DNA of 41,158 nucleotides from Octopus bimaculoides (GCF_001194135.2 NC_069000.1:1116468-1157625); one strand, 5' to 3'; shown: positions 3,801 through 38,814, numbered from the stretch's first letter. Numbers and translations: made by a program. Notes: a model not told the origin generated them from the sequence alone.

Positions 3801-4559
3801 CACATACATACATACAAAAATACTATGTTGTTGATGTTGATATTTCAAGGAAGGAGTCTTGACTCTAGGATAGAAACCGACTCTTTCTCTGTTGGCAAGA
3901 AATCTTGAAATAAAACTGAACAATTACATACAGTTATGAAGAAACGCGGATGTTATGTGCACATGCGCACACAGATAAACAAACGTAGGCATGTCCCCAT
4001 ATAAGCGCAAACATGTGAGTATATAAACAAACCACAAACTTACACACACACACACACACACATAAACAGATACACACAATTACATGTACACACTTCGACA
4101 TATGCACACAAACACACATCTATGCAATCACACCCACCCACCCACNNNNNNNNNNNNNNNNNNNNNNNNNNNNNNNNNNNNNNNNNNNNNNNNNNNNNNN
4201 NNNNNNNNNNNNNNNNNNNNNNNNNNNNNNNNNNNNNNNNNNNNNNNNNNNNNNNNNNNNNNNNNNNNNNNNNNNNNNNNNNNNNNNNNNNNNNNNNNNN
4301 NNNNNNNNNNNNNNNNNNNNNNNNNNNNNNNNNNNNNNNNNNNNNNNNNNNNNNNNNNNNNNNNNNNNNNNNNNNNNNNNNNNNNNNNNTGACTGCGGTG
4401 GTGGTGTCAACAGCTGCCGACTGCTGTCATCCGTTAAGTCGAGGTTGTTAAAGAAAGCCAACAGACTGAAGATGGTCCCTTAAGCGCAACCGCGCATCAA
4501 AAACGGAGGAGTGTTTGGGTGACGACGACGACGACGACGACCATGGCTGGAATTTGGAA

Positions 4560-4876
4560 GACAAAACCTAAAGAAGCCCGTTGTGTGTATTGGTCAGAGG
4601 TAGATTTTGCGAGTGTGTGTGTGTGTGTGTGTGTGTGCCTGTGTGCGTGTGTGTCTTTCTGTCTGTGCTTGTCTACCACCACCACCACTTGATAACCGGT
4701 GTTGGTGTGTTTCGTCCCCGTAATGTAGCGGTTCGGCAAAAGTACTCGATAGAATAAGTATCAGGCTTTAAAAAAATAAGCACTGAGGTCTATTTATTCG
4801 ACTAAAAATTCTTCAAAGCAGTGACCCAGCATGACCGCAGTCTAATGACTGATACAAGTAAAAAAAAATAAAAGAT
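4560..4876 (+). mobile_element. CORE-type SINE, 5'-truncated
   Basis: AAAGAAGCCCGTTG, then (TG)n, then the same tail as the 11780 copy, ending in an A-rich tract. Confidence 0.8.
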
Positions 4877-7036: not shown

Positions 7037-7819
7037 CACACATACAGAGTCTGAATTATATTTCGATGACTATAAATGGCTATTTAAATATAGATTTACA
7101 ACTAGTTATTTCATTTCAAAATACAATTATGGCGGTCTGCATTCCAAGTCTAGGTCCCACTAAACCCAAATTTGTCTTTCGTTCCTTCCAGAGTCGAATG
7201 AATATGATTCAACAGATTTAATATTTGCATAAAGCATTGTCAAAATGGAAATAGTCAAATGTTGAGGTGGTTTGGCCACATGGAGAGGATGGTGGAGGAG
7301 CGGATGGTGAGGAGGGTGATGAAGGCAGAAGTGGTAGGCAGCAGAACCAGAAGCAGACCTTGGTTTGTGTGGATGGATGGATGGATGGAGTGAGGAAAGC
7401 TTTGGTGGTCAGAGGTGTTGGAGNNNNNNNNNNTTTGGTGGTCAGAGGTGTTGGAGTGAGAGAGGCAAGAGAGTTTATAAACGATGGGAAAGCTTGGAGT
7501 GTGTTTGTGGGTGGATGAGTGAATTCGATGTTGCTCAGTGGAGTACGGAACCTGAATGATGCCACGGGGGGGGGGGAACAAACATATGCTGTCGGGGTCC
7601 TCTGCTGAATTTGGGGGTTGCGTTCTATGCCTTGACCCTTTTTTTAGTTGGGAAAGGAATGGAATGCCTGGTGTGTGTCTTGCTGTGGCTACCTCCTCCG
7701 ACACAAAATGGGGAATAGGCCTGGGTACATATAAGAAAAAAATAAAAACATATTTAAAGATCTTCCCAAGGAATATAGACTCATAAAGCCGGCTTTCCAG
7801 TTTCCATGATGCGTCTATT

Positions 7820-7990
7820 CCACCCCTGAACGGGTCGCCGGTCTTTCGCAGAGTGGCTCACTTTGGCCAGCTGAGTGAACTGGAGCAATGCGACATGAAG
7901 TGTTTTGCTCAAGAACACAACACATCGCCTGATCCGGGAATGGAAACCACAATCTTACAACCACGAGTCCAACATCGTAACCACTAACCC
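7820..7990 (-). mobile_element. tRNA-derived SINE, second CORE-like family
   Basis: Reverse complement: A-box TGGGTTAGTGG, B-box GGTTTCCATTCCC, then GTGTTCTTGAGCAAAACACTT...TTGCTCCAGTTCACTCAGCTG. Confidence 0.7.
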
Positions 7991-11947: not shown

Positions 11948-12157
11948 AGTGTCTCTTTGTGTCTGAGTTTGTTCCCCACCACCACTTGACAACCAGTGTT
12001 GGTTTGTTTATGTCCCCATAACTTAGCGGTTTGGCAAAAGAGACTGATACAATAAATACCAGGATTAAGAAGAAAAAAAAAGTACTGGAGTTGACTCATT
12101 CAACTAAAATTCTTCAAGGTGGTACCCCAGCATGGCCACGGTCCTAATGACTGAAAG
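11780..12157 (+). mobile_element. Near full-length tRNA-derived CORE-type SINE (head, CORE, internal TA/TG microsatellite, tail)
   Basis: B-box GGGTTCAGCCCC, CORE-like CACCTTGGGAAGGTG, GAAACTGAAAGAAGCCC, (TA)n(TG)n, tail CTTAGCGGTTTGGCAAAAGAGAC...CCAGCATGGCC...AATGACTGAAA; many related copies in the window. Confidence 0.85.
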
Positions 12158-14996: not shown

Positions 14997-15187
14997 AGTT
15001 TTCCTATCCACCCAGGAACCCAAAACTTTGTCAGTTTCTTCCATCTGTCGTGTTTGTTAAATACCAAGCAGCTGAGCCGACTTTCTTTTCCTGTGGCTTG
15101 TAACGACTCGTAATTCTCAGACAAAAACGACTGAAACCAACTCCCTTCATTGATTCTGTCTTCTTATAAATAAAACAGGCAAAAATC
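14997..15187 (+). other. 5' UTR portion of the ZNF coding exon (3' splice acceptor at 14995-14996)
   Basis: Long polypyrimidine tract ending TTTATTTATTTTTCTTTTCAG at 14996; no ATG between 14997 and the start codon. Confidence 0.7.
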
Positions 15188-17983
15188 ATGAACGAGCAAT
15201 CAGAAAACTGCCAAGTTTGCTGTAATGCTTCCTACAAACAAACGAAAAAATTATCTCCAGACATCAACCCTTACAAATGTGGGATCTGCTTGAAAGGTTT
15301 CCCCAAATTGTCTTTGTTGGCCAAACATGTCAAACTGGACAATTGTCGAGACAACGTGATTGACTGCAACCTTTGCAATGAGTCTTTTGATCATCCCAGC
15401 TTGCCGTTGAGTCATCCTCCTGCACAGCCGAGTCCTTGTCTCATGGAATGCACAAGGCCAAACAAGCCAAATAATTGCTGCAATGTTATTTTAAACAACC
15501 GAAACCCAAAGCAAAGCCCTTGTTGCAAAAAATCACCTTTGACAAAAAAACAGAACCAGCTTGTATCCGGAAATAATAATAATAATAATAATAATAATAT
15601 GGTGAATGAATGTTTTAAAACATCCACCATCTCAAGAAGGAACATGAATGGAAATGTCTCTCGCACCAAACCTTTTAAATGTAAAATATGCTTCAAGAGT
15701 TTTCCCAAAGCATCCATCCTTGCCAACCACACCAAATCTCACACAAAAGACAAATCTTTTAAGTGTGATATTTACAATAAAAATATTGAATCCACTAATT
15801 TCACCAGATATGAGAATAATCATTCGAGTGGTAAGGTTTTCAGTTGTAACATTTGTCACAAAGCTTTCTCTCAGTCCAGCAACCTCACAACACACAAACG
15901 CGTCCATTCTGGGGAAAGACCCTTCCAGTGTTACATTTGTAACAAAGCTTTCACAGAGTCTGGCAATCTTCGTCGTCACATGAGAATTCATTCTGGTGAG
16001 AGACCTTTTAAATGCGATATCTGTGAGAAACCATTCTCTCAGTTGTCCCACGTAGCAAAACACAGAAGCACACATTTTAAAATGAAGCATTTTAAAACTA
16101 AAACACACAATGGTAAGAACCGCATGAAAGCTAACAACGGTGCCAATAAACCGAATCCACGCCCTGGGCGCCGCCGGCAAGTTTCATCAAATGTTATCAA
16201 AATCTACTCTCCTTCCGGAAAAATCTGCTACAAGTGTGCAATCTGTGAAAAAGTGTTCAAAGAATCGGGGAACTTGACTCGCCATTTCAGGACTCACACC
16301 GGGGAGAGACCCTTCCATTGCAGTATTTGCTATAAATCATTCTCGCAAGCATCACATGTCCATAAACACATGAAAACTCACAGTGTTGACAAACCATTTT
16401 CTTGTGAACTTTGTCCGAAAAGTTTCTCAAATTTTGACAGCTTATATGAACATGTGAAGATTCATTCTGGTTTGGATGTTGAAGAACAAGCCAAGATTGA
16501 TATCCTTAGTCCTGCTAATATTGAAGAAACTGCTGTAGCAACCGTTATGGCTTTGGAGGAATCAAAAGACTCACTTGAAGCAATCAAACCTATTCTATTA
16601 CAACCAGAATATGATGTAGCATCTCTCCAGCCCAACCCAACCAGTGGCATCATTGAAGATTCTGCAAACCAGATCCTAATACAAGAACCTCTTACTCAGC
16701 AGTATCTTAACAGTAATTTGCCTCCAGAGTTGGGATTGCTGCCTGACATTCCAAGCGTACCGAAATCCTCGTCTGTTTTTGAATGTCACATCTGTCAAAA
16801 GACTTTCTCTCAGTATTGCTTCCTTACTCGACACAGTAAGATCCATTTGAAACTGAAACCCTACAAATGTAAAACGTGTGGCAAGGCTTTCACGGAGTCT
16901 GGAAATCTCTCTCGCCACATGAGAATACATTCTGGAGAGCGTCCGTACAAATGCAGTGTCTGCAGCAAAGCTTTCTCTCAAGCAACTCATTTACAGAAAC
17001 ACATGAACACACACACAACAGACAAGTCCCATTGTTGTCATTTTTGTCAGGCAACTTTTAGACTTTCGGCTGATTTGACAAAACATTTGAAAATTCACTG
17101 CCAAGAGAAACAGTACCAGTGCCATATCTGCAATAAGGTTTTTACAGAGTCTGGCTCTCTGTCAAGACACATGCGTATTCACTCTGGTTCGCGTCCTTAT
17201 CAGTGTGAAGTGTGTGACAAATCATTTTTCCAGTCTTGCGTCCTCAATAAACACAAACGGATCCATTCGGAAGACAAGCCATTCAAATGTGAAATTTGCA
17301 GGAAGGCTTTTACCGAGTCGGGTAACTTGACCCGTCACTACCGTACACACACGGGTGAGAAACCCTATCGCTGTAATATTTGCAACAAACCTTTTTCTCA
17401 AGCATCACACGTCAACAAACACATGCGCACACATCCTGAGTCGCAATACTTTCAACAAGATTTCACCTGTAGTACTTTGTTGGAAGAGAGTGACCCTTAT
17501 TCTAACATGTCCTTAATAGAGGAAATGATGGCCTCGACAGACACCGGCGCCAATCATGAAGGACCTGTTACTCCGGAGAACTTGGCTGCTCAGTACACAG
17601 ACTTATCTCGTCATGTGCGTTTTTATGCAGACAGCAAGATGTGCAAGTGCACCAACTGCAACACTTCTTTCACCATTTCCCAATACACCGAACATATCAA
17701 CACTTGTCTTGCAAGTGCACCAAATATTGTAAAAACTGATTCTAACACAAATGAGCTGAAGCCAGAAAACTGTGATGGTGGGGGCAGTGTCACTGGTGAT
17801 GCTGTGCTCAACATAAAGACAGCTTTAAATGTTTTGAAAAACCAACAAGAAAACACAACCAAAGAAAACATTCTGCCAGAAGACTCGAATTGTATTCCTG
17901 ACATAACAACAAACAATGGTTGTAATGATGAGGCAGGCAGCACACAGCCTCCTCCCGTCACTGTGAAAACTGAATCTATGTGA
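15188..17983 (+). CDS. C2H2 zinc-finger protein, 931 aa, single coding exon; 15 canonical fingers in three blocks (4+3+8), three degenerate N-terminal fingers and one C-terminal C2HC-like finger
   Basis: Uninterrupted 2796-nt ORF with repeated F/Y-x-C-x2-C-x3-F-x5-L/V-x2-H-x3-H motifs and TGERP/SGERP/TGEKP linkers. The ATG has A at -3 and an in-frame TAA upstream at 15167-15169. An acidic/Pro/Gln-rich spacer separates blocks 2 and 3. Confidence 0.96.
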   Translation: MNEQSENCQVCCNASYKQTKKLSPDINPYKCGICLKGFPKLSLLAKHVKLDNCRDNVIDCNLCNESFDHPSLPLSHPPAQPSPCLMECTRPNKPNNCCNVILNNRNPKQSPCCKKSPLTKKQNQLVSGNNNNNNNNNMVNECFKTSTISRRNMNGNVSRTKPFKCKICFKSFPKASILANHTKSHTKDKSFKCDIYNKNIESTNFTRYENNHSSGKVFSCNICHKAFSQSSNLTTHKRVHSGERPFQCYICNKAFTESGNLRRHMRIHSGERPFKCDICEKPFSQLSHVAKHRSTHFKMKHFKTKTHNGKNRMKANNGANKPNPRPGRRRQVSSNVIKIYSPSGKICYKCAICEKVFKESGNLTRHFRTHTGERPFHCSICYKSFSQASHVHKHMKTHSVDKPFSCELCPKSFSNFDSLYEHVKIHSGLDVEEQAKIDILSPANIEETAVATVMALEESKDSLEAIKPILLQPEYDVASLQPNPTSGIIEDSANQILIQEPLTQQYLNSNLPPELGLLPDIPSVPKSSSVFECHICQKTFSQYCFLTRHSKIHLKLKPYKCKTCGKAFTESGNLSRHMRIHSGERPYKCSVCSKAFSQATHLQKHMNTHTTDKSHCCHFCQATFRLSADLTKHLKIHCQEKQYQCHICNKVFTESGSLSRHMRIHSGSRPYQCEVCDKSFFQSCVLNKHKRIHSEDKPFKCEICRKAFTESGNLTRHYRTHTGEKPYRCNICNKPFSQASHVNKHMRTHPESQYFQQDFTCSTLLEESDPYSNMSLIEEMMASTDTGANHEGPVTPENLAAQYTDLSRHVRFYADSKMCKCTNCNTSFTISQYTEHINTCLASAPNIVKTDSNTNELKPENCDGGGSVTGDAVLNIKTALNVLKNQQENTTKENILPEDSNCIPDITTNNGCNDEAGSTQPPPVTVKTESM
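15572..15598 (+). repeat. (AAT)9 coding microsatellite (poly-Asn)
   Basis: Nine pure AAT codons in frame. Confidence 0.95.
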
Positions 17984-19111: not shown

Positions 19112-20683
19112 GTAAGTGGCCATTGTTTGGTGATGTTGCTCCACAACAGGCATCAGCACTCCACTGGTTCACCTGCCGATTCTGTTTGATAACAGGTATT
19201 TTACTCCATTCGCATGATCACTGCCTGATTTTGCAGGCAGGACTTTGCTATGTATAAGCGTTTCATCCCCAGAATCACATTTCCAAATTCATCGTGTGTT
19301 CTTCACGATGCAGTGTTTGTCATGCCATAAAATATGTTATTCTATGTTTTTAGTGTATCCACAAAGAGGAATACAAGAGTGAAGCAATCTCCACAAAAGA
19401 AAACATCATTCTATATAATTTTTGTGAATACTTTTTCTCTTCTTTTTGTAGAACTTTGTTTTTTTTCAGAAATATTCTTTATTCAAGTTTCCTGATTGGT
19501 GACAAGAAGGACTTCAAGCTATAGACGATCGTCTCAATAAGTCTCATTCGACCCATACTTGCATGGATATTTTACAACCATGAGCCCAACGCCCCAACCT
19601 CCTAAGCCACATGCCTCCTCCATCCTTGCAGTGATAGTCTGCCAGGATTGCACAAACCATCTTTTTCATTCTTACAGGAAACTGGTGAATGGTTCCTTCA
19701 AAACCTGCCACCAACAATGTCATGGTTAATGAAAATGTGATGAAAAGAATAAAGCAAAATTCTGCTGAGTGTGAACTGATTTCATTTTAAGTTCATTTTC
19801 TTTTTATGAAGCATTTCTTATGACTAAAAGATTGATCTGTTTGACTACTGAACGTCTCGAAACGAAAACTGTACGGAGAGACAAATATGGCTTTGTGTTT
19901 CTAAATACAAGGTACATAACTCTGCTTGTCTTACTCAAACAGAAGACTCCAAGCAAACCAGGGATGTTCTGGTTTGGTAAGTTCAAAATTTTGATGTTAT
20001 GAGAAAATAGAGAACCATTCACCGAAGAACTGAGAATTCTTATTTTACAATTCAGCTGAAATCCAAAGACAAAGGTATCAGAATTTGGTGTTAGTCTTGC
20101 CTAATCTGAAGATACACCACAAACAGTAGTGTTTAGTTCAGTTACCCCTAATCAGGACCCTGCATGTAACCCCCTTTCATACTTCATCGCCATCAAACCT
20201 TTTTTTCCAGTGCCTCAGTCAACCTTACTCCATTGTTTTGATGACCTGAGTCTCTGCAACCCATCCGTTGCCACAACCCATACTTTTATTTCAATGATTC
20301 ATTCAAATCTAATTTAACAAGCTTTAGGCCTGAAAAGGCAGACATTAATACAACGATGATGTTGATGTGCACTTTGTTAAAAACTTGGTACTGTATAACG
20401 ATTTCTTTTTTATTCATGTGATTGTTTTGATGGTTTTGACTGAATTAATTTCATGGGTTAAACCTTCTCATCAAATCGTTGGTGAAACAAGAAAGAAATG
20501 GCAAATCTCCAAGACTCTGTAACCTAAGCTAACATCTTGTGTTGTCCTGATTACAAGACTGGATTTAATAATCATTGGCATTGAATCAAATGTTTGGCAA
20601 GACATTCAGATTTGTGTGTGATTTCAAATAAGAAACCTCATTTTCTGGTGCAATTCGTGTAAATGACTTACTCCACACATACA

Positions 20684-25193: not shown

Positions 25194-25229
<36 letters not shown>

Positions 25230-25531
25230 NNNNNNNNNNNNNNNNNNNNNNNNNNNNNNNNNNNNNNNNNNNNNNNNNNNNNNNNNNNNNNNNNNNNNNN
25301 NNNNNNNNNNNNNNNNNNNNNNNNNNNNNNNNNNNNNNNNNNNNNNNNNNNNNNNNNNNNNNNNNNNNNNNNNNNNNNNNNNNNNNNNNNNNNNNNNNNN
25401 NNNNNNNNNNNNNNNNNNNNNNNNNNNNNNNNNNNNNNNNNNNNNNNNNNNNNNNNNNNNNNNNNNNNNNNNNNNNNNNNNNNNNNNNNNNNNNNNNNNN
25501 NNNNNNNNNNNNNNNNNNNNNNNNNNNNNNN

Positions 25532-25562
<31 letters not shown>

Positions 25563-32831: not shown

Positions 32832-33119
32832 ATATTCTTTTACTTGTTTCAGTCATTTGACTGCGGCCATGCTGCAGTACCACCATGAAGGATTTTAGTT
32901 GAACGAAACGACCTCCAGTACTTATTTTTAAGCCTGGTAATATTCCATCGGTTACTTTTGCCGAACCGCTAAGTTACAGGGACGTAAACACAGCAACAGT
33001 TCTCAATTGGTGGAAGTGGAAAAACACTGACACACGCACACGCACGCGCGCACCACGCTGTGGGACTGAACTCCAAACCATGTGGTTGGGAAGCAAGTGT
33101 CTTACCACACAGCCACGTG
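32832..33119 (-). mobile_element. CORE-type SINE with the CORE segment deleted (head joined to tail)
   Basis: Reverse complement gives A-box TGGCTGTGTGG and B-box GAGTTCAGTCCC, then passes directly to a TG-like tract and the tail. Confidence 0.8.
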
Positions 33120-33124
33120 CATAT

Positions 33125-33370
33125 CTTTTATCTTTTATTTGTTTCAGTCTCTTTTGACTGCGGCCATCCTGGAGCACCGTGTTTAACGGTTTTAGTCGAA
33201 TAAATCGACCCCAGGACTTATTTTGTTTAAAGCCTAATACGTTTTCTATCGGTCTCTTTTGCCGATTCGCTAGGTAACGGGGACGTAAGCACACCAACAC
33301 CAGTTGTCAAGCAGTGGTGGCGAGCAAACACTGACACAAACACACACACAGACACACACACACACACACA
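33125..33370 (-). mobile_element. CORE-type SINE tail half, tandem to the previous copy
   Basis: TTTGTTTCAGTC...GACTGCGGCCATCCTGGAGCACC...TTTGCCGATTCGCTAGG...CAGTTGTCAAGC followed by (CA)n. Confidence 0.8.
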
Positions 33371-33959: not shown

Positions 33960-34170
33960 CTGCTTGACAACAAGTGTTGGTGTGTTTATGTCCCCAAAAC
34001 TTAGCAGTTCGGTTAAAGAGACCGAGGGAATAAACACTAGGATTAAAAAGAAAATAACTCCTGGGGGGGTCGATTCGGTCGGTGAAAAAATCCTTCAAGG
34101 CGATGCCCCAGCATGACCGAAGCATGGCTGCAGCATGGCCGAAACAAGTAAAGGATAGAAAATAAAAAAT
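33960..34170 (+). mobile_element. CORE-type SINE tail half
   Basis: GCTTGACAAC...CTTAGCAGTTCGGTTAAAGAGACC...CTTCAAGGCGATGCCCCAGCATG...GAAACAAGTAAA. Confidence 0.78.
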
Positions 34171-35990: not shown

Positions 35991-36523
35991 TCTTCCTGCT
36001 ATTTCCTGCAGAGAGGTGGGTTTTGCACGATGGAGTTCTGATCTTTGGCAGAGAGCAGTTATTTCGCAGGCAACCACAGCTCTTCCTTCGTCGCATACAT
36101 TGTTCCTGGCCTCCAGCAGAAGTTATATCTCGTATTTGTGTTTCCTGTTCTATTCAGCATACGTCATCATTATGTACCAACTGAATGTGTATAATTTCTG
36201 GCCGTTCCTTCAAGATGTTTCTTTCCAGTTTTGCCGTCTTTAATGCTTTTAACGGATTGAATAAATCGTCGCACTTAATCCTGATTTCCTCGTTCTTCCT
36301 TTATCTTTACCTACAGCCATATTGAAACCAGCATGATTTATCAACTCAACTTTCAGCCGTTAAAGGTGCAGCAAAAATATTCAACTTTTCTAAATATCCG
36401 GGCATTTTCTGAGTCATCTAAAAAAAAAGAGAGAGAACAAAGAAATAGACATTCGCGGCACACCTGCGGTTTCATACACGGCACACATTGTACGACGGGG
36501 CACAAAACGTGAAAGCATCGGTT

Positions 36524-36569
<46 letters not shown>

Positions 36570-37119
36570 NNNNNNNNNNNNNNNNNNNNNNNNNNNNNNN
36601 NNNNNNNNNNNNNNNNNNNNNNNNNNNNNNNNNNNNNNNNNNNNNNNNNNNNNNNNNNNNNNNNNNNNNNNNNNNNNNNNNNNNNNNNNNNNNNNNNNNN
36701 NNNNNNNNNNNNNNNNNNNNNNNNNNNNNNNNNNNNNNNNNNNNNNNNNNNNNNNNNNNNNNNNNNNNNNNNNNNNNNNNNNNNNNNNNNNNNNNNNNNN
36801 NNNNNNNNNNNNNNNNNNNNNNNNNNNNNNNNNNNNNNNNNNNNNNNNNNNNNNNNNNNNNNNNNNNNNNNNNNNNNNNNNNNNNNNNNNNNNNNNNNNN
36901 NNNNNNNNNNNNNNNNNNNNNNNNNNNNNNNNNNNNNNNNNNNNNNNNNNNNNNNNNNNNNNNNNNNNNNNNNNNNNNNNNNNNNNNGGGGGGGGGGGAG
37001 AAAGAGCGAATAATGGAGACAAGATTAGAGAGAATAATCAGGTAAGAGGAGATGGAGAGAGATTTTTTAGTTGAGTGAAATACAGCAGAAGATGCACACA
37101 CACAAACAAAGAGGAAGAC

Positions 37120-38610: not shown

Positions 38611-38814
38611 CACTGCTTGACAACTAGTGTTGGTACATTTACGTCTCCGTCACTTAGCAGATCAGCAAAGAACACCGATGAATTAAGTTCCAAGGTTTAA
38701 AAAATGACAACTACTGGGGTAGATTCATTTGCACGAGAACTCTTCAAGGCGGTGCCCCAGCATGGCCACAGTCTTAATGACTGAAACAAGTAAAAGCATA
38801 AAAGAAAAAAAAGA
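38611..38814 (+). mobile_element. CORE-type SINE tail half
   Basis: GCTTGACAAC...CTTCAAGGCGGTGCCCCAGCATGGCCACAGTCTTAATGACTGAAACAAGTAAAAG. Confidence 0.8.

What the first reader, a model, noticed from the sequence alone, without database searches (positions are those of the whole stretch)
15920..17432. ZNF built from a five-times repeated di-finger module, conserved in protein but diverged at silent sites
Seen: the recognition helices alternate. Type A reads ESGNLRR (15956), ESGNLTR (16262), ESGNLSR (16895), ESGSLSR (17147) and ESGNLTR (17315). Each is immediately followed by type B: QLSHVAK (16040), QASHVHK (16346), QATHLQK (16979), QSCVLNK (17231) and QASHVNK (17399). The type A helices use different synonymous codons (GAGTCTGGCAAT, GAATCGGGGAAC, GAGTCTGGAAAT, GAGTCGGGTAAC), so they are old duplicates held by purifying selection rather than a recent tandem expansion. 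Established C2H2 code (R6=G, N3=A, E/D-1=C; K6=G/T, H3=G, Q-1=A; antiparallel binding) predicts each pair reads about 5'-(G/T)GAGAC-3'. Inference: the modules are spread over three blocks separated by long linkers, so the protein could bind several copies of one hexamer multivalently, for example dispersed or tandem repeats. GAGAC occurs in the tail of the SINE family that fills this window (AAAGAGAC) and in GA/GACA microsatellites. With no KRAB or ZAD domain, this is a candidate for a lineage-specific, KRAB-independent repeat-recognition factor, in a group known for a very large C2H2 expansion.
Basis: partly seen in the sequence, partly recalled or inferred. Interest (0 to 1): 0.72.

Follow-up and report, generated by a model that had tools for sequence, protein, structure and literature searches.

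The report
Conserved cephalopod zinc-finger gene, repeated two-finger heads
This is an intact, uncharacterised zinc-finger gene shared by octopus and cuttlefish. Four, or in octopus five, near-identical two-finger units have been kept almost unchanged since the two lineages split, so it is more likely an ordinary DNA-binding regulator with a conserved target than a defence against octopus-specific repeats.

Summary
Window 15188-17983 (+) is one uninterrupted 931-aa ORF with 16 C2H2 fingers, and all ten helix coordinates are exact. The A (ESGNLxR) then B (QxSHxxK) adjacency is far from generic. Silent sites between the five modules are saturated.

The window is Octopus, with 95% identity to an O. 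vulgaris protein named 'ZNF271-like'. Collinear orthologues exist in cuttlefish (transcripts found in runs cited by Sepia esculenta papers) and in two other species. None was found outside cephalopods.

- **Conserved modules:** A/B helices of modules 1, 2, 3 and 5 are 52/56 identical between octopus and cuttlefish, against 20/42 for the other fingers.
- **Linkers:** canonical [ST]GE[RK]P linkers are conserved only inside these modules and at F3→A1.
- **Module 4:** it is A-like only in octopus and is relaxed elsewhere.

The predicted 5'-GGAGAC-3' applies the recognition code correctly but is untested. The repeat-targeting idea is not supported:

- KGAGAC is not enriched in the window (27 observed, 34 expected).
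- The SINE-like family carries only AAAGAGAC, internally, in 3 of 6 copies.
- The helices are frozen, whereas octopus SINEs are lineage-specific.

Verdict: a new member of a known kind, of moderate-to-low interest.

The parts
15188..17983 (+). Complete coding sequence (931 aa plus stop) of a poly-C2H2 zinc-finger protein, in one uninterrupted ORF
   Evidence: ORF list. Pfam zf-C2H2 1.2e-80 and zf-H2C2_2 3e-82. 95% identical over its full length to O. vulgaris CAI9738012.1, and in the same 90% cluster as O. sinensis XP_029647798.
15839..15907 (+). Finger F3 (helix QSSNLTT), joined to A1 by a canonical SGERP linker. Together with module 1 it forms a three-finger unit.
   Evidence: Helix is 7/7 identical in cuttlefish. 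The F3→A1 linker is canonical in octopus and cuttlefish; L003 has SGVRP.
15923..16075 (+). Module 1: A1 (ESGNLRR, helix at 15956) plus B1 (QLSHVAK, helix at 16040)
   Evidence: Identity to cuttlefish is A1 7/7 and B1 5/7. The internal linker SGE[RK]P is conserved.
16076..16228 (+). Basic linker 1 (53 aa in octopus, 68 aa in cuttlefish) with a conserved NVIKI..S.SGK motif just before A2
   Evidence: Alignments; linker lengths.
16229..16381 (+). Module 2: A2 (ESGNLTR, 16262) plus B2 (QASHVHK, 16346)
   Evidence: Identity to cuttlefish is A2 7/7 and B2 6/7. The TGERP linker is invariant.
16466..16777 (+). Acidic, poorly conserved linker 2 (about 106 aa) between finger blocks 2 and 3
   Evidence: No Pfam match even at E<=10. 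Low conservation in the alignment.
16862..17014 (+). Module 3: A3 (ESGNLSR, 16895) plus B3 (QATHLQK, 16979)
   Evidence: A3 is 7/7 and B3 6-7/7 identical across species. The SGERP linker is invariant.
17114..17266 (+). Module 4, weak: A4 (ESGSLSR, 17147) plus B4 (QSCVLNK, 17231). A-like only in octopus.
   Evidence: A4 reads ENDKFQC, DPNNFQC and ERSKLQR in the other species, 0-1/7 identical. dN/dS is 0.32-0.37, against 0.10 for the core modules. The linker is non-canonical: SGSRP, SDQRP or TDRRP.
17282..17434 (+). Module 5: A5 (ESGNLTR, 17315) plus B5 (QASHVNK, 17399)
   Evidence: Identity to cuttlefish is A5 7/7 and B5 7/7. The TGEKP linker is invariant in five sequences.
17573..17722 (+). 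Conserved C-terminal core: a degenerate half-finger (YTDLSRHVRFY) followed by an atypical CX2CX11HX3C finger (CTNCNTSFTISQYTEHINTC, 17651-17707; an extra conserved Cys lies at 17642-17644)
   Evidence: Invariant columns in five sequences. Only sub-threshold Pfam hits: Sgf11 at 0.004-0.015, and zf-C2HC_2. The AF2 model is a beta-beta-alpha-like fold with pLDDT 75-83 in the core. No significant fold match.
17963..17974 (+). Near-terminal VKTE (IKTE in the other species), which fits the psi-K-x-E SUMOylation consensus
   Evidence: K, T and E are invariant in all five sequences. The SUMO reading is an inference from the known consensus and was not tested.

Best explanation
The region is the DNA-binding core of an intact, expressed poly-C2H2 zinc-finger gene with a single coding exon. 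The gene is conserved one-to-one between octopuses and decapodiform cephalopods and is annotated only as 'zinc finger protein 271-like'.

It contains four deeply conserved reading heads: F3-A1-B1, A2-B2, A3-B3 and A5-B5. A fifth head, A4-B4, is decaying. Each head is a pair of fingers with a conserved canonical [ST]GE[RK]P linker inside it. The linkers between heads are non-canonical, variable or long.

The heads arose before the octopus/decapodiform split, most simply by internal duplication of a di-finger. They have since evolved independently, with no sign of gene conversion, under strong purifying selection on their specificity residues.

**Inferred mechanism.** Each head docks on the same short DNA word, predicted from the recognition code to be about 5'-GGA-GA(C/T)-3'. 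One molecule could then engage several copies of that word, or use different heads at differently arranged sites. The target is a conserved host sequence rather than a lineage-specific repeat. A conserved C-terminal atypical C2HC finger and a terminal psi-K-x-E motif are the likeliest partner or regulatory surfaces.

**Shown here:** gene integrity, orthology, module anatomy, and the constraint on helices and linkers.

**Inferred only:** DNA binding itself, the motif, multivalency and the effector function.
For: - **Intact gene.** The ORF and 16 fingers are intact, and all coordinates are exact.
- **Orthologues.** Full-length collinear orthologues were found:
  - O. vulgaris and O. sinensis;
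  - P0002, 952 aa and 49% identical;
  - L003 genomic and P0122.
- **Expression.** A 90%-cluster mate of P0002 (P0125) sits on 3.7-6.8 kb contigs in many sequencing runs. Four of these runs are cited in Sepia esculenta larval transcriptome papers. The gene is therefore expressed in a decapodiform.
- **Helix conservation, octopus vs cuttlefish.** Core A/B helices are 52/56 identical, against 20/42 for the other fingers (Fisher p=5e-7). All four core A helices are 28/28 identical.
- **Substitution rates.** Between octopus and cuttlefish, dN is 0.061 in core helices, 0.47 in other helices and 0.67 in non-finger sequence. Between cuttlefish and L003, dN/dS is 0.10 in core helices, 0.32-0.37 in module 4 and 0.44 in non-finger sequence.
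- **Linkers.** Canonical linkers are conserved only at A1→B1, A2→B2, A3→B3, A5→B5 and nearly so at F3→A1 (L003 has SGVRP). All others are non-canonical, and B2→F8 even varies in length.
- **Age of the modules.** Silent sites between modules are saturated. Position-specific features, such as SG vs TG linkers and FKESGNLTRH in module 2, are kept across species. This argues against recent duplication or conversion.
- **Pattern is not generic**.
- **Motif prediction** agrees with published finger modules and with the closest solved di-finger, Aart.
- **Distribution.** An exhaustive profile search with the C-terminal region against 1.84 billion representative proteins found only the cephalopod orthologues.
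Against: - No binding data exist, and recognition-code predictions for natural fingers are often wrong. Glu at position -1 is a weak base contact (my own knowledge).
- Framework similarity among A fingers is only modestly above background. Common descent of the modules is therefore not proven.
- Absence outside cephalopods rests on the C-terminal profile only. The search with the module profile returned only fragments of 90 aa or less and was uninformative. Nautilus and many molluscs may be missing from the databases.
- No effector domain was identified.
- The L003 copy carries three single-base frameshifts. I read these as assembly errors, since two lie in A-runs and there are no stop codons, but that is an inference.
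Confidence: 0.58

Rival explanations
1. One reading: a KRAB-independent repeat-recognition factor. Its iso-specific heads bind GAGAC-containing SINE copies or GA/GACA microsatellites, as part of the cephalopod ZNF-versus-transposon interplay.
For: - Octopus ZNF ORFs as a class are predicted to match transposon consensus sequences more often than expected (PMC10547256).
- AAAGAGAC is over-represented in the window, 7 observed against 1.9 expected, and several copies lie in a SINE-like family.
- Multivalent heads would suit dispersed or tandem repeats.
Against: - The full predicted word KGAGAC is not enriched (27 observed, 34 expected; 94 of 100 shuffles reach 27).
- In the SINE-like family the site is internal, reads A-GAGAC, and is present in only 3 of 6 copies.
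- A 5-mer match is expected by chance in almost any element.
- The specificity residues are frozen between octopus and cuttlefish. SINEs are reported to be octopus-enriched and mostly lineage-specific, while squids carry LINEs (PMC12513265).
- The gene appears to be a one-to-one orthologue with no close paralogue among the top hits, unlike expanding transposon-targeting clusters.
Confidence: 0.1
2. The A and B helices were not inherited from one duplicated di-finger. They converged, or were repeatedly re-selected, on the same residues in unrelated fingers because the protein needs several heads for one word.
For: - Outside the helix, A-A framework identity is only 6.2/12, against 4.0-5.0 for other finger pairs, and B-B is 4.8/12.
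- Silent sites carry no residual signal.
- ESG[NS]L helices arise independently elsewhere, for example in the Dreissena protein P0012.
Against: - Five A fingers, each followed at the same 28-residue spacing by a B finger and each with the same linker type, is most simply explained by duplication of a pair.
- A-A framework identity is still the highest class.
- B-type helices were seen nowhere else among 2424 fingers.
Confidence: 0.15
3. The conserved di-finger heads do not read double-stranded DNA. They bind RNA or protein partners, and the conservation reflects that interface.
For: - Weak Pfam hits to zf-C2H2_jaz (dsRNA-binding type) and to ZNF451-type double fingers.
- Some multi-finger proteins use fingers for protein or RNA contacts (my own knowledge).
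Against: - The most conserved positions are exactly the canonical base-contacting ones: -1, 2, 3 and 6.
- The canonical TGEKP-type linker, associated with DNA-bound finger pairs (my own knowledge), is conserved only inside the heads.
- The jaz and ZNF451 scores are generic cross-hits of C2H2 fingers: 28.7 bits against a 22.6 cut-off with 0 separate stretches, and 27.6 bits, below the 29 cut-off.
Confidence: 0.08
4. It is just one fast-evolving, recent member of the octopus-specific C2H2 expansion, or a decaying copy, with no special conservation.
For: - The N-terminal fingers are degenerate in octopus relative to cuttlefish.
- The automatic name is generic.
Against: - The 931-aa ORF is intact.
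- Collinear orthologues exist in four or more species spanning both coleoid superorders.
- There is strong purifying selection.
- No near paralogue appears among the top hits.
Confidence: 0.02

Closest known systems
ZAS / HIVEP (Schnurri, PRDII-BF1/MBP-1) proteins
   Same: These are large proteins in which widely separated pairs of consecutive C2H2 fingers each bind the same kind of DNA word on their own. Each pair is followed by an acidic region. [quoted passage not shown] Here too, iso-typic finger pairs are separated by long linkers, and acidic stretches follow blocks 2 and 3.
   Different: No sequence relationship was detected. The helices differ. This protein has four or five pairs plus other fingers rather than two ZAS domains, a different predicted word, and is much smaller. 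The resemblance is one of working principle only.
Spalt-like (SALL) double-zinc-finger proteins
   Same: Several mutually similar double-finger modules are dispersed along one protein, with a signature helix repeated in each module (from my own knowledge; not tested here).
   Different: The SALL signature (FTTKGNLK-type second finger, N-terminal C2HC finger) is absent. No SALL protein appeared among the hits. Here the signature is ESGNLxR followed by QxSHxxK.
Engineered poly-zinc-finger peptides built from two-finger units (Moore, Klug & Choo 2001; from my own knowledge), and the designed protein Aart (PDB 2i13)
   Same: Canonical linkers lie inside two-finger units and non-canonical or longer linkers between units, which is the pattern conserved here. 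The Aart fingers QRANLRA+QLAHLRA are the closest solved di-finger to module 5, at 53 bits.
   Different: Those are artificial proteins in which each unit reads a different word. Here the units are natural and apparently iso-specific.
KRAB-ZNF, FiNZ-ZNF and other transposon-targeting poly-ZNF families (for example ZFP568, PDB 5v3m, the best PDB sequence hit)
   Same: Tandem C2H2 arrays with a large coding exon. These are proposed for octopus ZNFs in general (PMC10547256). ZFP568 is the top sequence match in the PDB.
   Different: There is no KRAB or other repressor domain. The gene appears single-copy and conserved across octopus and cuttlefish. Its specificity residues are under purifying selection, not diversifying.
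Human ZNF271 (source of the automatic name)
   Same: It is a multi-finger C2H2 protein.
   Different: The name comes from a best-hit transfer. The best vertebrate alignments cover only about 24% of the protein at 49% identity or less, which is generic finger similarity. There is no evidence of orthology.

Membership tests
Classical C2H2 (Krueppel-type) zinc-finger proteins | Repeated CX2CX12HX3H fingers that pass the Pfam zf-C2H2 and zf-H2C2_2 thresholds | tested here: met
   16 fingers found by pattern. PF00096 scores 261.9 bits against a cut-off of 25.2, and PF13465 scores 266.9 bits against a cut-off of 40.
Classical C2H2 (Krueppel-type) zinc-finger proteins | TGEKP-type inter-finger linkers | tested here: met
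   Present, but conserved only at F3→A1 and inside modules 1, 2, 3 and 5. The other linkers are non-canonical.
KRAB-ZNF | N-terminal KRAB domain (PF01352) | tested here: not met
   No KRAB hit for the whole protein at E<=0.01, nor for the N-terminal 164 aa at E<=10.
ZAD-ZNF, BTB/POZ-ZNF, SCAN-ZNF | N-terminal ZAD (PF07776), BTB or SCAN (PF02023) domain | tested here: not met
   None reported by Pfam. In cuttlefish the N-terminus consists of further C2H2 fingers.
PRDM proteins | PR/SET domain upstream of the fingers | tested here: not met
   No SET hit. The Dreissena hit P0012 that carries ESG[NS]L helices does have SET domains, but it has no B-type helix and no A→B pair.
ZAS / HIVEP | Two ZAS domains (finger pair plus acidic plus Ser/Thr-rich region) in a very large protein that binds GGGGNNNNCC-type sites | tested here: inconclusive
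   The architecture is analogous: finger pairs, with acidic linkers after blocks 2 and 3. No HIVEP protein appeared among the hits and the helices are unrelated. DNA specificity cannot be tested here. It is not filed as a member.
Transposon-targeting, rapidly evolving poly-ZNF clusters | Lineage-specific paralogue clusters with variable or positively selected helix positions | tested here: not met
   One-to-one collinear orthologues. Core helix dN/dS is 0.10 and identity is 52/56 across the octopus/cuttlefish split.
Sgf11-type or UBZ4-type C2HC fingers (for the C-terminal finger only) | CX2CX11HX3C spacing plus a family profile match | tested here: inconclusive
   The spacing fits. Pfam Sgf11 scores only 15-17 bits against a cut-off of 26.4. 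The Foldseek top hits are Sgf11 chains, but at E about 1. The acidic residue I recall as important in UBZ4 ubiquitin binding is N, T or A here.

The most novel reading that the evidence does not exclude
A cephalopod-specific architectural chromatin protein. Its four frozen, iso-specific two-finger heads are joined by flexible basic and acidic linkers. With them it binds several copies of one short word (about GGAGAC) at once and so clusters or bridges distant sites. A new C-terminal C2HC finger and a SUMO-type motif would act as the partner interface. That would make it an invertebrate counterpart of multivalent looping or insulator zinc-finger proteins, arisen with the reorganised coleoid genome.
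Probability: 0.1. Interest if true: 0.65.

Novelty: new member of a known kind. Interest (0 to 1): 0.34.

Why it matters
Cephalopods carry more than a thousand C2H2 genes, almost none of which has a known target. Most are lineage-specific, which makes them hard to study.

This gene is an exception. It is apparently single-copy, shared by octopus and cuttlefish, and expressed. Its putative DNA-reading residues have been held almost unchanged since the two lineages split, which I recall as roughly 270 million years ago (not checked here). The design is simple and testable: several heads predicted to read the same six bases.

That makes it a tractable entry point for a first cephalopod ZNF-to-motif assignment, and for testing whether reiterated iso-specific finger pairs act multivalently.

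It does not by itself change what is known about zinc-finger proteins. It also does not support a link between this gene and octopus SINEs.

Tried and rejected
- **Module-profile search.** The third homologue search, with a profile of 14 modules (A5), was meant to find other proteins with A→B pairs. It returned only fragments of 90 aa or less and not even the known orthologues. None carried an A→B pair. It was uninformative.
- **C-terminal domain.**
  - Pfam at E<=10 gave only sub-threshold hits: Sgf11, zf_Tbcl_Rhp7 and zf-C2HC_2.
  - The PDB profile search gave only generic C2H2 hits.
  - AF2 gave a moderate model with pLDDT 65.
  - Foldseek against the PDB gave nothing with E<0.6.
  - The domain type remains unresolved.
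- **Searches for SRR8281677, SRR29271455 and ERZ21867824 in papers** found nothing. A second set of run accessions identified Sepia esculenta. The species behind L003 and P0122 remain unidentified. I call them decapodiform only because they are 75% and 65% identical to the cuttlefish protein.
- **Rfam and tRNA scans of the window** found nothing, so the SINE-like family could not be typed.
- **ZNF271, ZNF287 and ZNF236 orthology.** Rejected, or not supported for ZNF236.
  - The ZNF287 alignments are short: 49% identity or less over about 24% of the query.
  - The ZNF236 alignments are long but only 24-30% identical and were not followed up.
- **Pseudogene reading of L003.** Rejected as the more likely explanation. 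It has three single-base deletions, two in A-runs, and no stop codons over about 950 codons.
- **Paired KGAGAC sites.** I looked through the 27 listed sites for pairs at the spacing implied by block 3. The only close pair is at 19531 and 19541. No dedicated search was run.
Full report
**1. What is there**

Window 15188-17983 (+) is a single uninterrupted ORF of 931 codons. Pattern matching finds 16 C2H2 fingers.

Pfam reports only C2H2-type families above threshold, apart from low-scoring cross-hits that fall on finger sequence (GAGA, zf-C2H2_jaz). There is no KRAB, ZAD, BTB, SCAN or SET domain.

The fingers form three blocks:
- aa 165-296;
- aa 350-426;
- aa 533-749.

A 53-aa basic linker and a 106-aa acidic linker separate the blocks. 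The rest of the 41-kb window holds no other convincing ORF. It consists of microsatellites, assembly gaps and dispersed repeats. Rfam and tRNA scans are empty.

**2. Is the alternation real and non-random?**

Yes. The five 51-residue modules are at these coordinates:
- module 1, 15923-16075;
- module 2, 16229-16381;
- module 3, 16862-17014;
- module 4, 17114-17266;
- module 5, 17282-17434.

They are 53-73% identical in protein. Their synonymous differences are saturated (pS 0.68-1.08, dN 0.16-0.39).

In 2424 fingers from 122 retrieved C2H2 proteins, A-type helices (ESG[NS]L.[RK]) occur 15 times, and 10 of those are in orthologues of this gene. B-type helices, and the A→B adjacency, occur only in the orthologues.

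Within the protein, helix identity is 5.8/7 for A-A and 3.7/7 for B-B, against 0.6/7 for A-B and 1.5-2/7 for other finger pairs. Framework identity is only mildly raised for A-A, at 6.2/12 against 4.0-5.0. Origin by duplication of a di-finger is therefore the simplest reading, but it is not proven.

**3. Where it comes from and who else has it**

The protein is 95% identical to O. vulgaris CAI9738012.1 ('zinc finger protein 271-like'). It shares a 90% cluster with O. sinensis XP_029647798-800, and the window's own protein is already in NCBI and EukProt. The window is therefore an Octopus genome. I infer O. bimaculoides.

P0002 (952 aa, 49% identical) is collinear from the N-terminus to the last residues.
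- Its 90% cluster has 31 members.
- One member, P0125, sits on 3.7-6.8 kb contigs from many sequencing runs.
- Four of those runs are cited in Sepia esculenta larval transcriptome papers.

This is an expressed cuttlefish orthologue.

A genomic contig (L003) and a partial transcript (P0122) give two further species, 75% and 65% identical to the cuttlefish protein.
- L003 has three single-base deletions, two of them in A-runs, and no stop codons.
- I read these as assembly errors.
- The coding sequence is collinear with genomic DNA in both lineages, so there is a single coding exon.

An exhaustive HMMER search of 1.84 billion representative proteins with a profile of the non-finger C-terminal region found only the cephalopod orthologues at strong E-values. 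No close paralogue and no non-cephalopod protein with the module appeared among the top full-length hits. No paper in the searchable library mentions this gene name together with octopus.

**4. Pattern of constraint**

*Helix identity, octopus against cuttlefish.*
- A1, A2, A3 and A5 are 7/7 identical.
- B1, B2, B3 and B5 are 5-7/7, giving 52/56 for the eight core helices.
- F3 (QSSNLTT) is 7/7.
- The other fingers total 20/42 (Fisher p=5e-7).
- Non-finger sequence is 184/563 identical.

*Substitution rates.* dS between octopus and cuttlefish is saturated.

| Region | dN, octopus vs cuttlefish | dN/dS, cuttlefish vs L003 |
|---|---|---|
| Core helices | 0.061 | 0.10 |
| Core frameworks | 0.162 | 0.10 |
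| Other helices | 0.47 | 0.17 |
| Module 4 | 0.25-0.46 | 0.32-0.37 |
| Non-finger | 0.67 | 0.44 |

*Module 4 is the exception.* A4 is ESGSLSR in octopus but ENDKFQC, DPNNFQC and ERSKLQR elsewhere. B4 has V rather than H at position 3. There are therefore four robust modules and one decaying or octopus-retained module.

*Position-specific features survive in all species.*
- Modules 1 and 3 keep an SGE linker, and modules 2 and 5 keep TGE.
- Module 2 keeps FKESGNLTRH.
- Module 3 keeps QATHL.

The copies have therefore evolved independently since before the octopus/decapodiform split, with no sign of concerted evolution.

*Linkers.* The canonical [ST]GE[RK]P linker is conserved at A1→B1, A2→B2, A3→B3 and A5→B5 in every sequence. 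It is also conserved at F3→A1 except in L003, which has SGVRP. Every other linker is non-canonical and variable. B2→F8 even changes length, with a poly-Asn insertion in L003.

The conserved functional units are thus one three-finger head (F3-A1-B1) and three two-finger heads.

**5. How it most likely works**

The most conserved residues are the canonical base-contacting positions, and the canonical linker is kept only inside the heads. This is the signature expected of DNA-reading finger pairs. That linkers of this type are tied to DNA-bound pairs is established knowledge, not tested here.

Applying the recognition code:
- finger A has R6, N3 and E-1, which predicts G-A-C;
- finger B has K6, H3 and Q-1, which predicts (G/T)-G-A.

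This agrees with published modules: DPGNLVR=GAC, TSGNLVR=GAT, QSGNLTR=GAA and QSGHLTR/QRAHLER=GGA (PMC5260015). It also agrees with the closest solved di-finger, Aart QRANLRA+QLAHLRA.

I rate the exact word at about 0.35, because Glu at -1 is a weak determinant and natural arrays often deviate from the code.

The working model is one protein with several heads of the same specificity on flexible linkers. It has a precedent in ZAS/HIVEP proteins, whose widely separated finger pairs each bind the same site (PMC3048431, citing Fan & Maniatis 1990). DNA binding, multivalency and effector function are all inferences.

**6. The repeat-recognition idea**

It is not supported by what can be tested here.
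- KGAGAC occurs 27 times in the window against 34 expected.
- AAAGAGAC is over-represented, 7 against 1.9 expected. In the roughly 190-nt SINE-like family (six copies, 68-76% identical) the site is internal, is preceded by A, and is present in only three of the six copies.
- A 5-mer match has no discriminating power.
- Frozen helices across the octopus/cuttlefish split do not fit a target that is lineage-specific. SINEs are reported to be octopus-enriched, and most cephalopod repeats to be lineage-specific (PMC12513265).

The general proposal that octopus ZNFs match transposons (PMC10547256) remains possible for the expanded clusters. This gene does not behave like them.

**7. Other conserved parts**

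The C-terminal region contains a degenerate half-finger followed by an atypical CX2CX11HX3C finger (core 17573-17722). It is invariant at 27 of 59 positions in five sequences.
- It gives only sub-threshold matches to Sgf11 and C2HC families.
- It folds as a beta-beta-alpha-like unit at moderate confidence.
- It has no significant structural neighbour.
- The nearest outside sequence is P0140, a protein made of 11 tandem copies of a similar finger.

The protein ends with a conserved [VI]KTE, which fits the SUMO consensus (inference). The three N-terminal fingers and one block-1 finger are intact in cuttlefish but degenerate in octopus.

**8. Verdict**

The evolutionary inference, old copies under purifying selection, is confirmed and extended. 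The motif prediction is reasonable but untested. The SINE/repeat hypothesis is unsupported.

The gene is already annotated, though uncharacterised. It is a new member of a known kind, a poly-C2H2 factor with reiterated iso-typic finger pairs. Interest is moderate to low, and its main value is as a tractable, conserved cephalopod ZNF for motif determination.

Noticed in passing
window 17573-17722 (aa 796-845): A conserved C-terminal element: a degenerate half-finger plus an atypical CX2CX11HX3C finger (CTNCNTSFTISQYTEHINTCL). It is invariant at 27 of 59 positions in five cephalopod sequences. It has only sub-threshold Sgf11/C2HC Pfam hits and no significant fold match.
   Followed up: partly
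window 17963-17974 (aa 926-929): A near-terminal VKTE (IKTE in cuttlefish and relatives) is conserved in all orthologues and fits the psi-K-x-E SUMOylation consensus.
   Followed up: no
window 16190-16228 (aa 335-347): The motif NVIKI.S.SGK immediately upstream of finger A2 is conserved across species, inside an otherwise variable, very basic linker. Its role is unknown. The cuttlefish linker also has a KGRPR stretch that looks AT-hook-like.
   Followed up: no
window 15209-15420 and 15758-15826: Three N-terminal fingers and one block-1 finger are intact C2H2 fingers in cuttlefish and L003. In octopus they have lost zinc ligands, for example CDIYNKNI...ENNH.
   Followed up: partly
window 15572-15598: An (AAT)9 poly-Asn tract lies in the coding sequence. 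It is 9 Asn here and 7 in O. vulgaris, and it is absent at this place in cuttlefish. L003 has a different poly-Asn run, between B2 and F8.
   Followed up: no
window 4688-4840, 11985-12137, 32861-33001(-), 33158-33314(-), 33960-34122, 38613-38812: A dispersed SINE-like family of about 190 nt with six copies, 68-76% identical (core CTTGACAAC..GTGTTGGTGTGTTTACGTCCCCGTAACTTAGCGGTTCGGCAAAAG..). Copies are often flanked by microsatellites. ARAGORN and Rfam do not recognise it.
   Followed up: partly
window about 746-1100, 4190-4400, 25200-25560 and 36520-36980, plus a short gap near 7430: Runs of N (assembly gaps), several of them embedded in (AC)n, (AT)n or (GA)n microsatellites. Approximate positions are taken from the X-runs in the ORF list.
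   Followed up: no
L003 7688-10549: The genomic orthologue in ENA assembly ERZ21867824 is split by three single-base deletions, near 7820, 8315 and 9964. Two lie in A-runs. The gene caller reported it as three separate proteins. These are probably long-read assembly errors.
   Followed up: partly
P0140 (608 aa) and P0143 (656 aa): Unrelated proteins that carry the same unusual finger type. P0140 has 11 tandem copies of CSKCERTFGKSQYYEHIKKCG-like CX2CX11HX3C units. P0143 has two C2H2+C2HC pairs (..FHFIQYLREHVVGCL). This may be an undescribed C2HC finger subtype.
   Followed up: no
window 15150-15187: A pyrimidine-rich stretch ending in AG (..ttctgtcttcttataaataaaacag|gcaaaaatcATG) lies 9 nt upstream of the start codon. 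It suggests a splice acceptor, hence a 5'-UTR intron and a single large coding exon. O. sinensis has three transcript accessions that encode the same protein.
   Followed up: no
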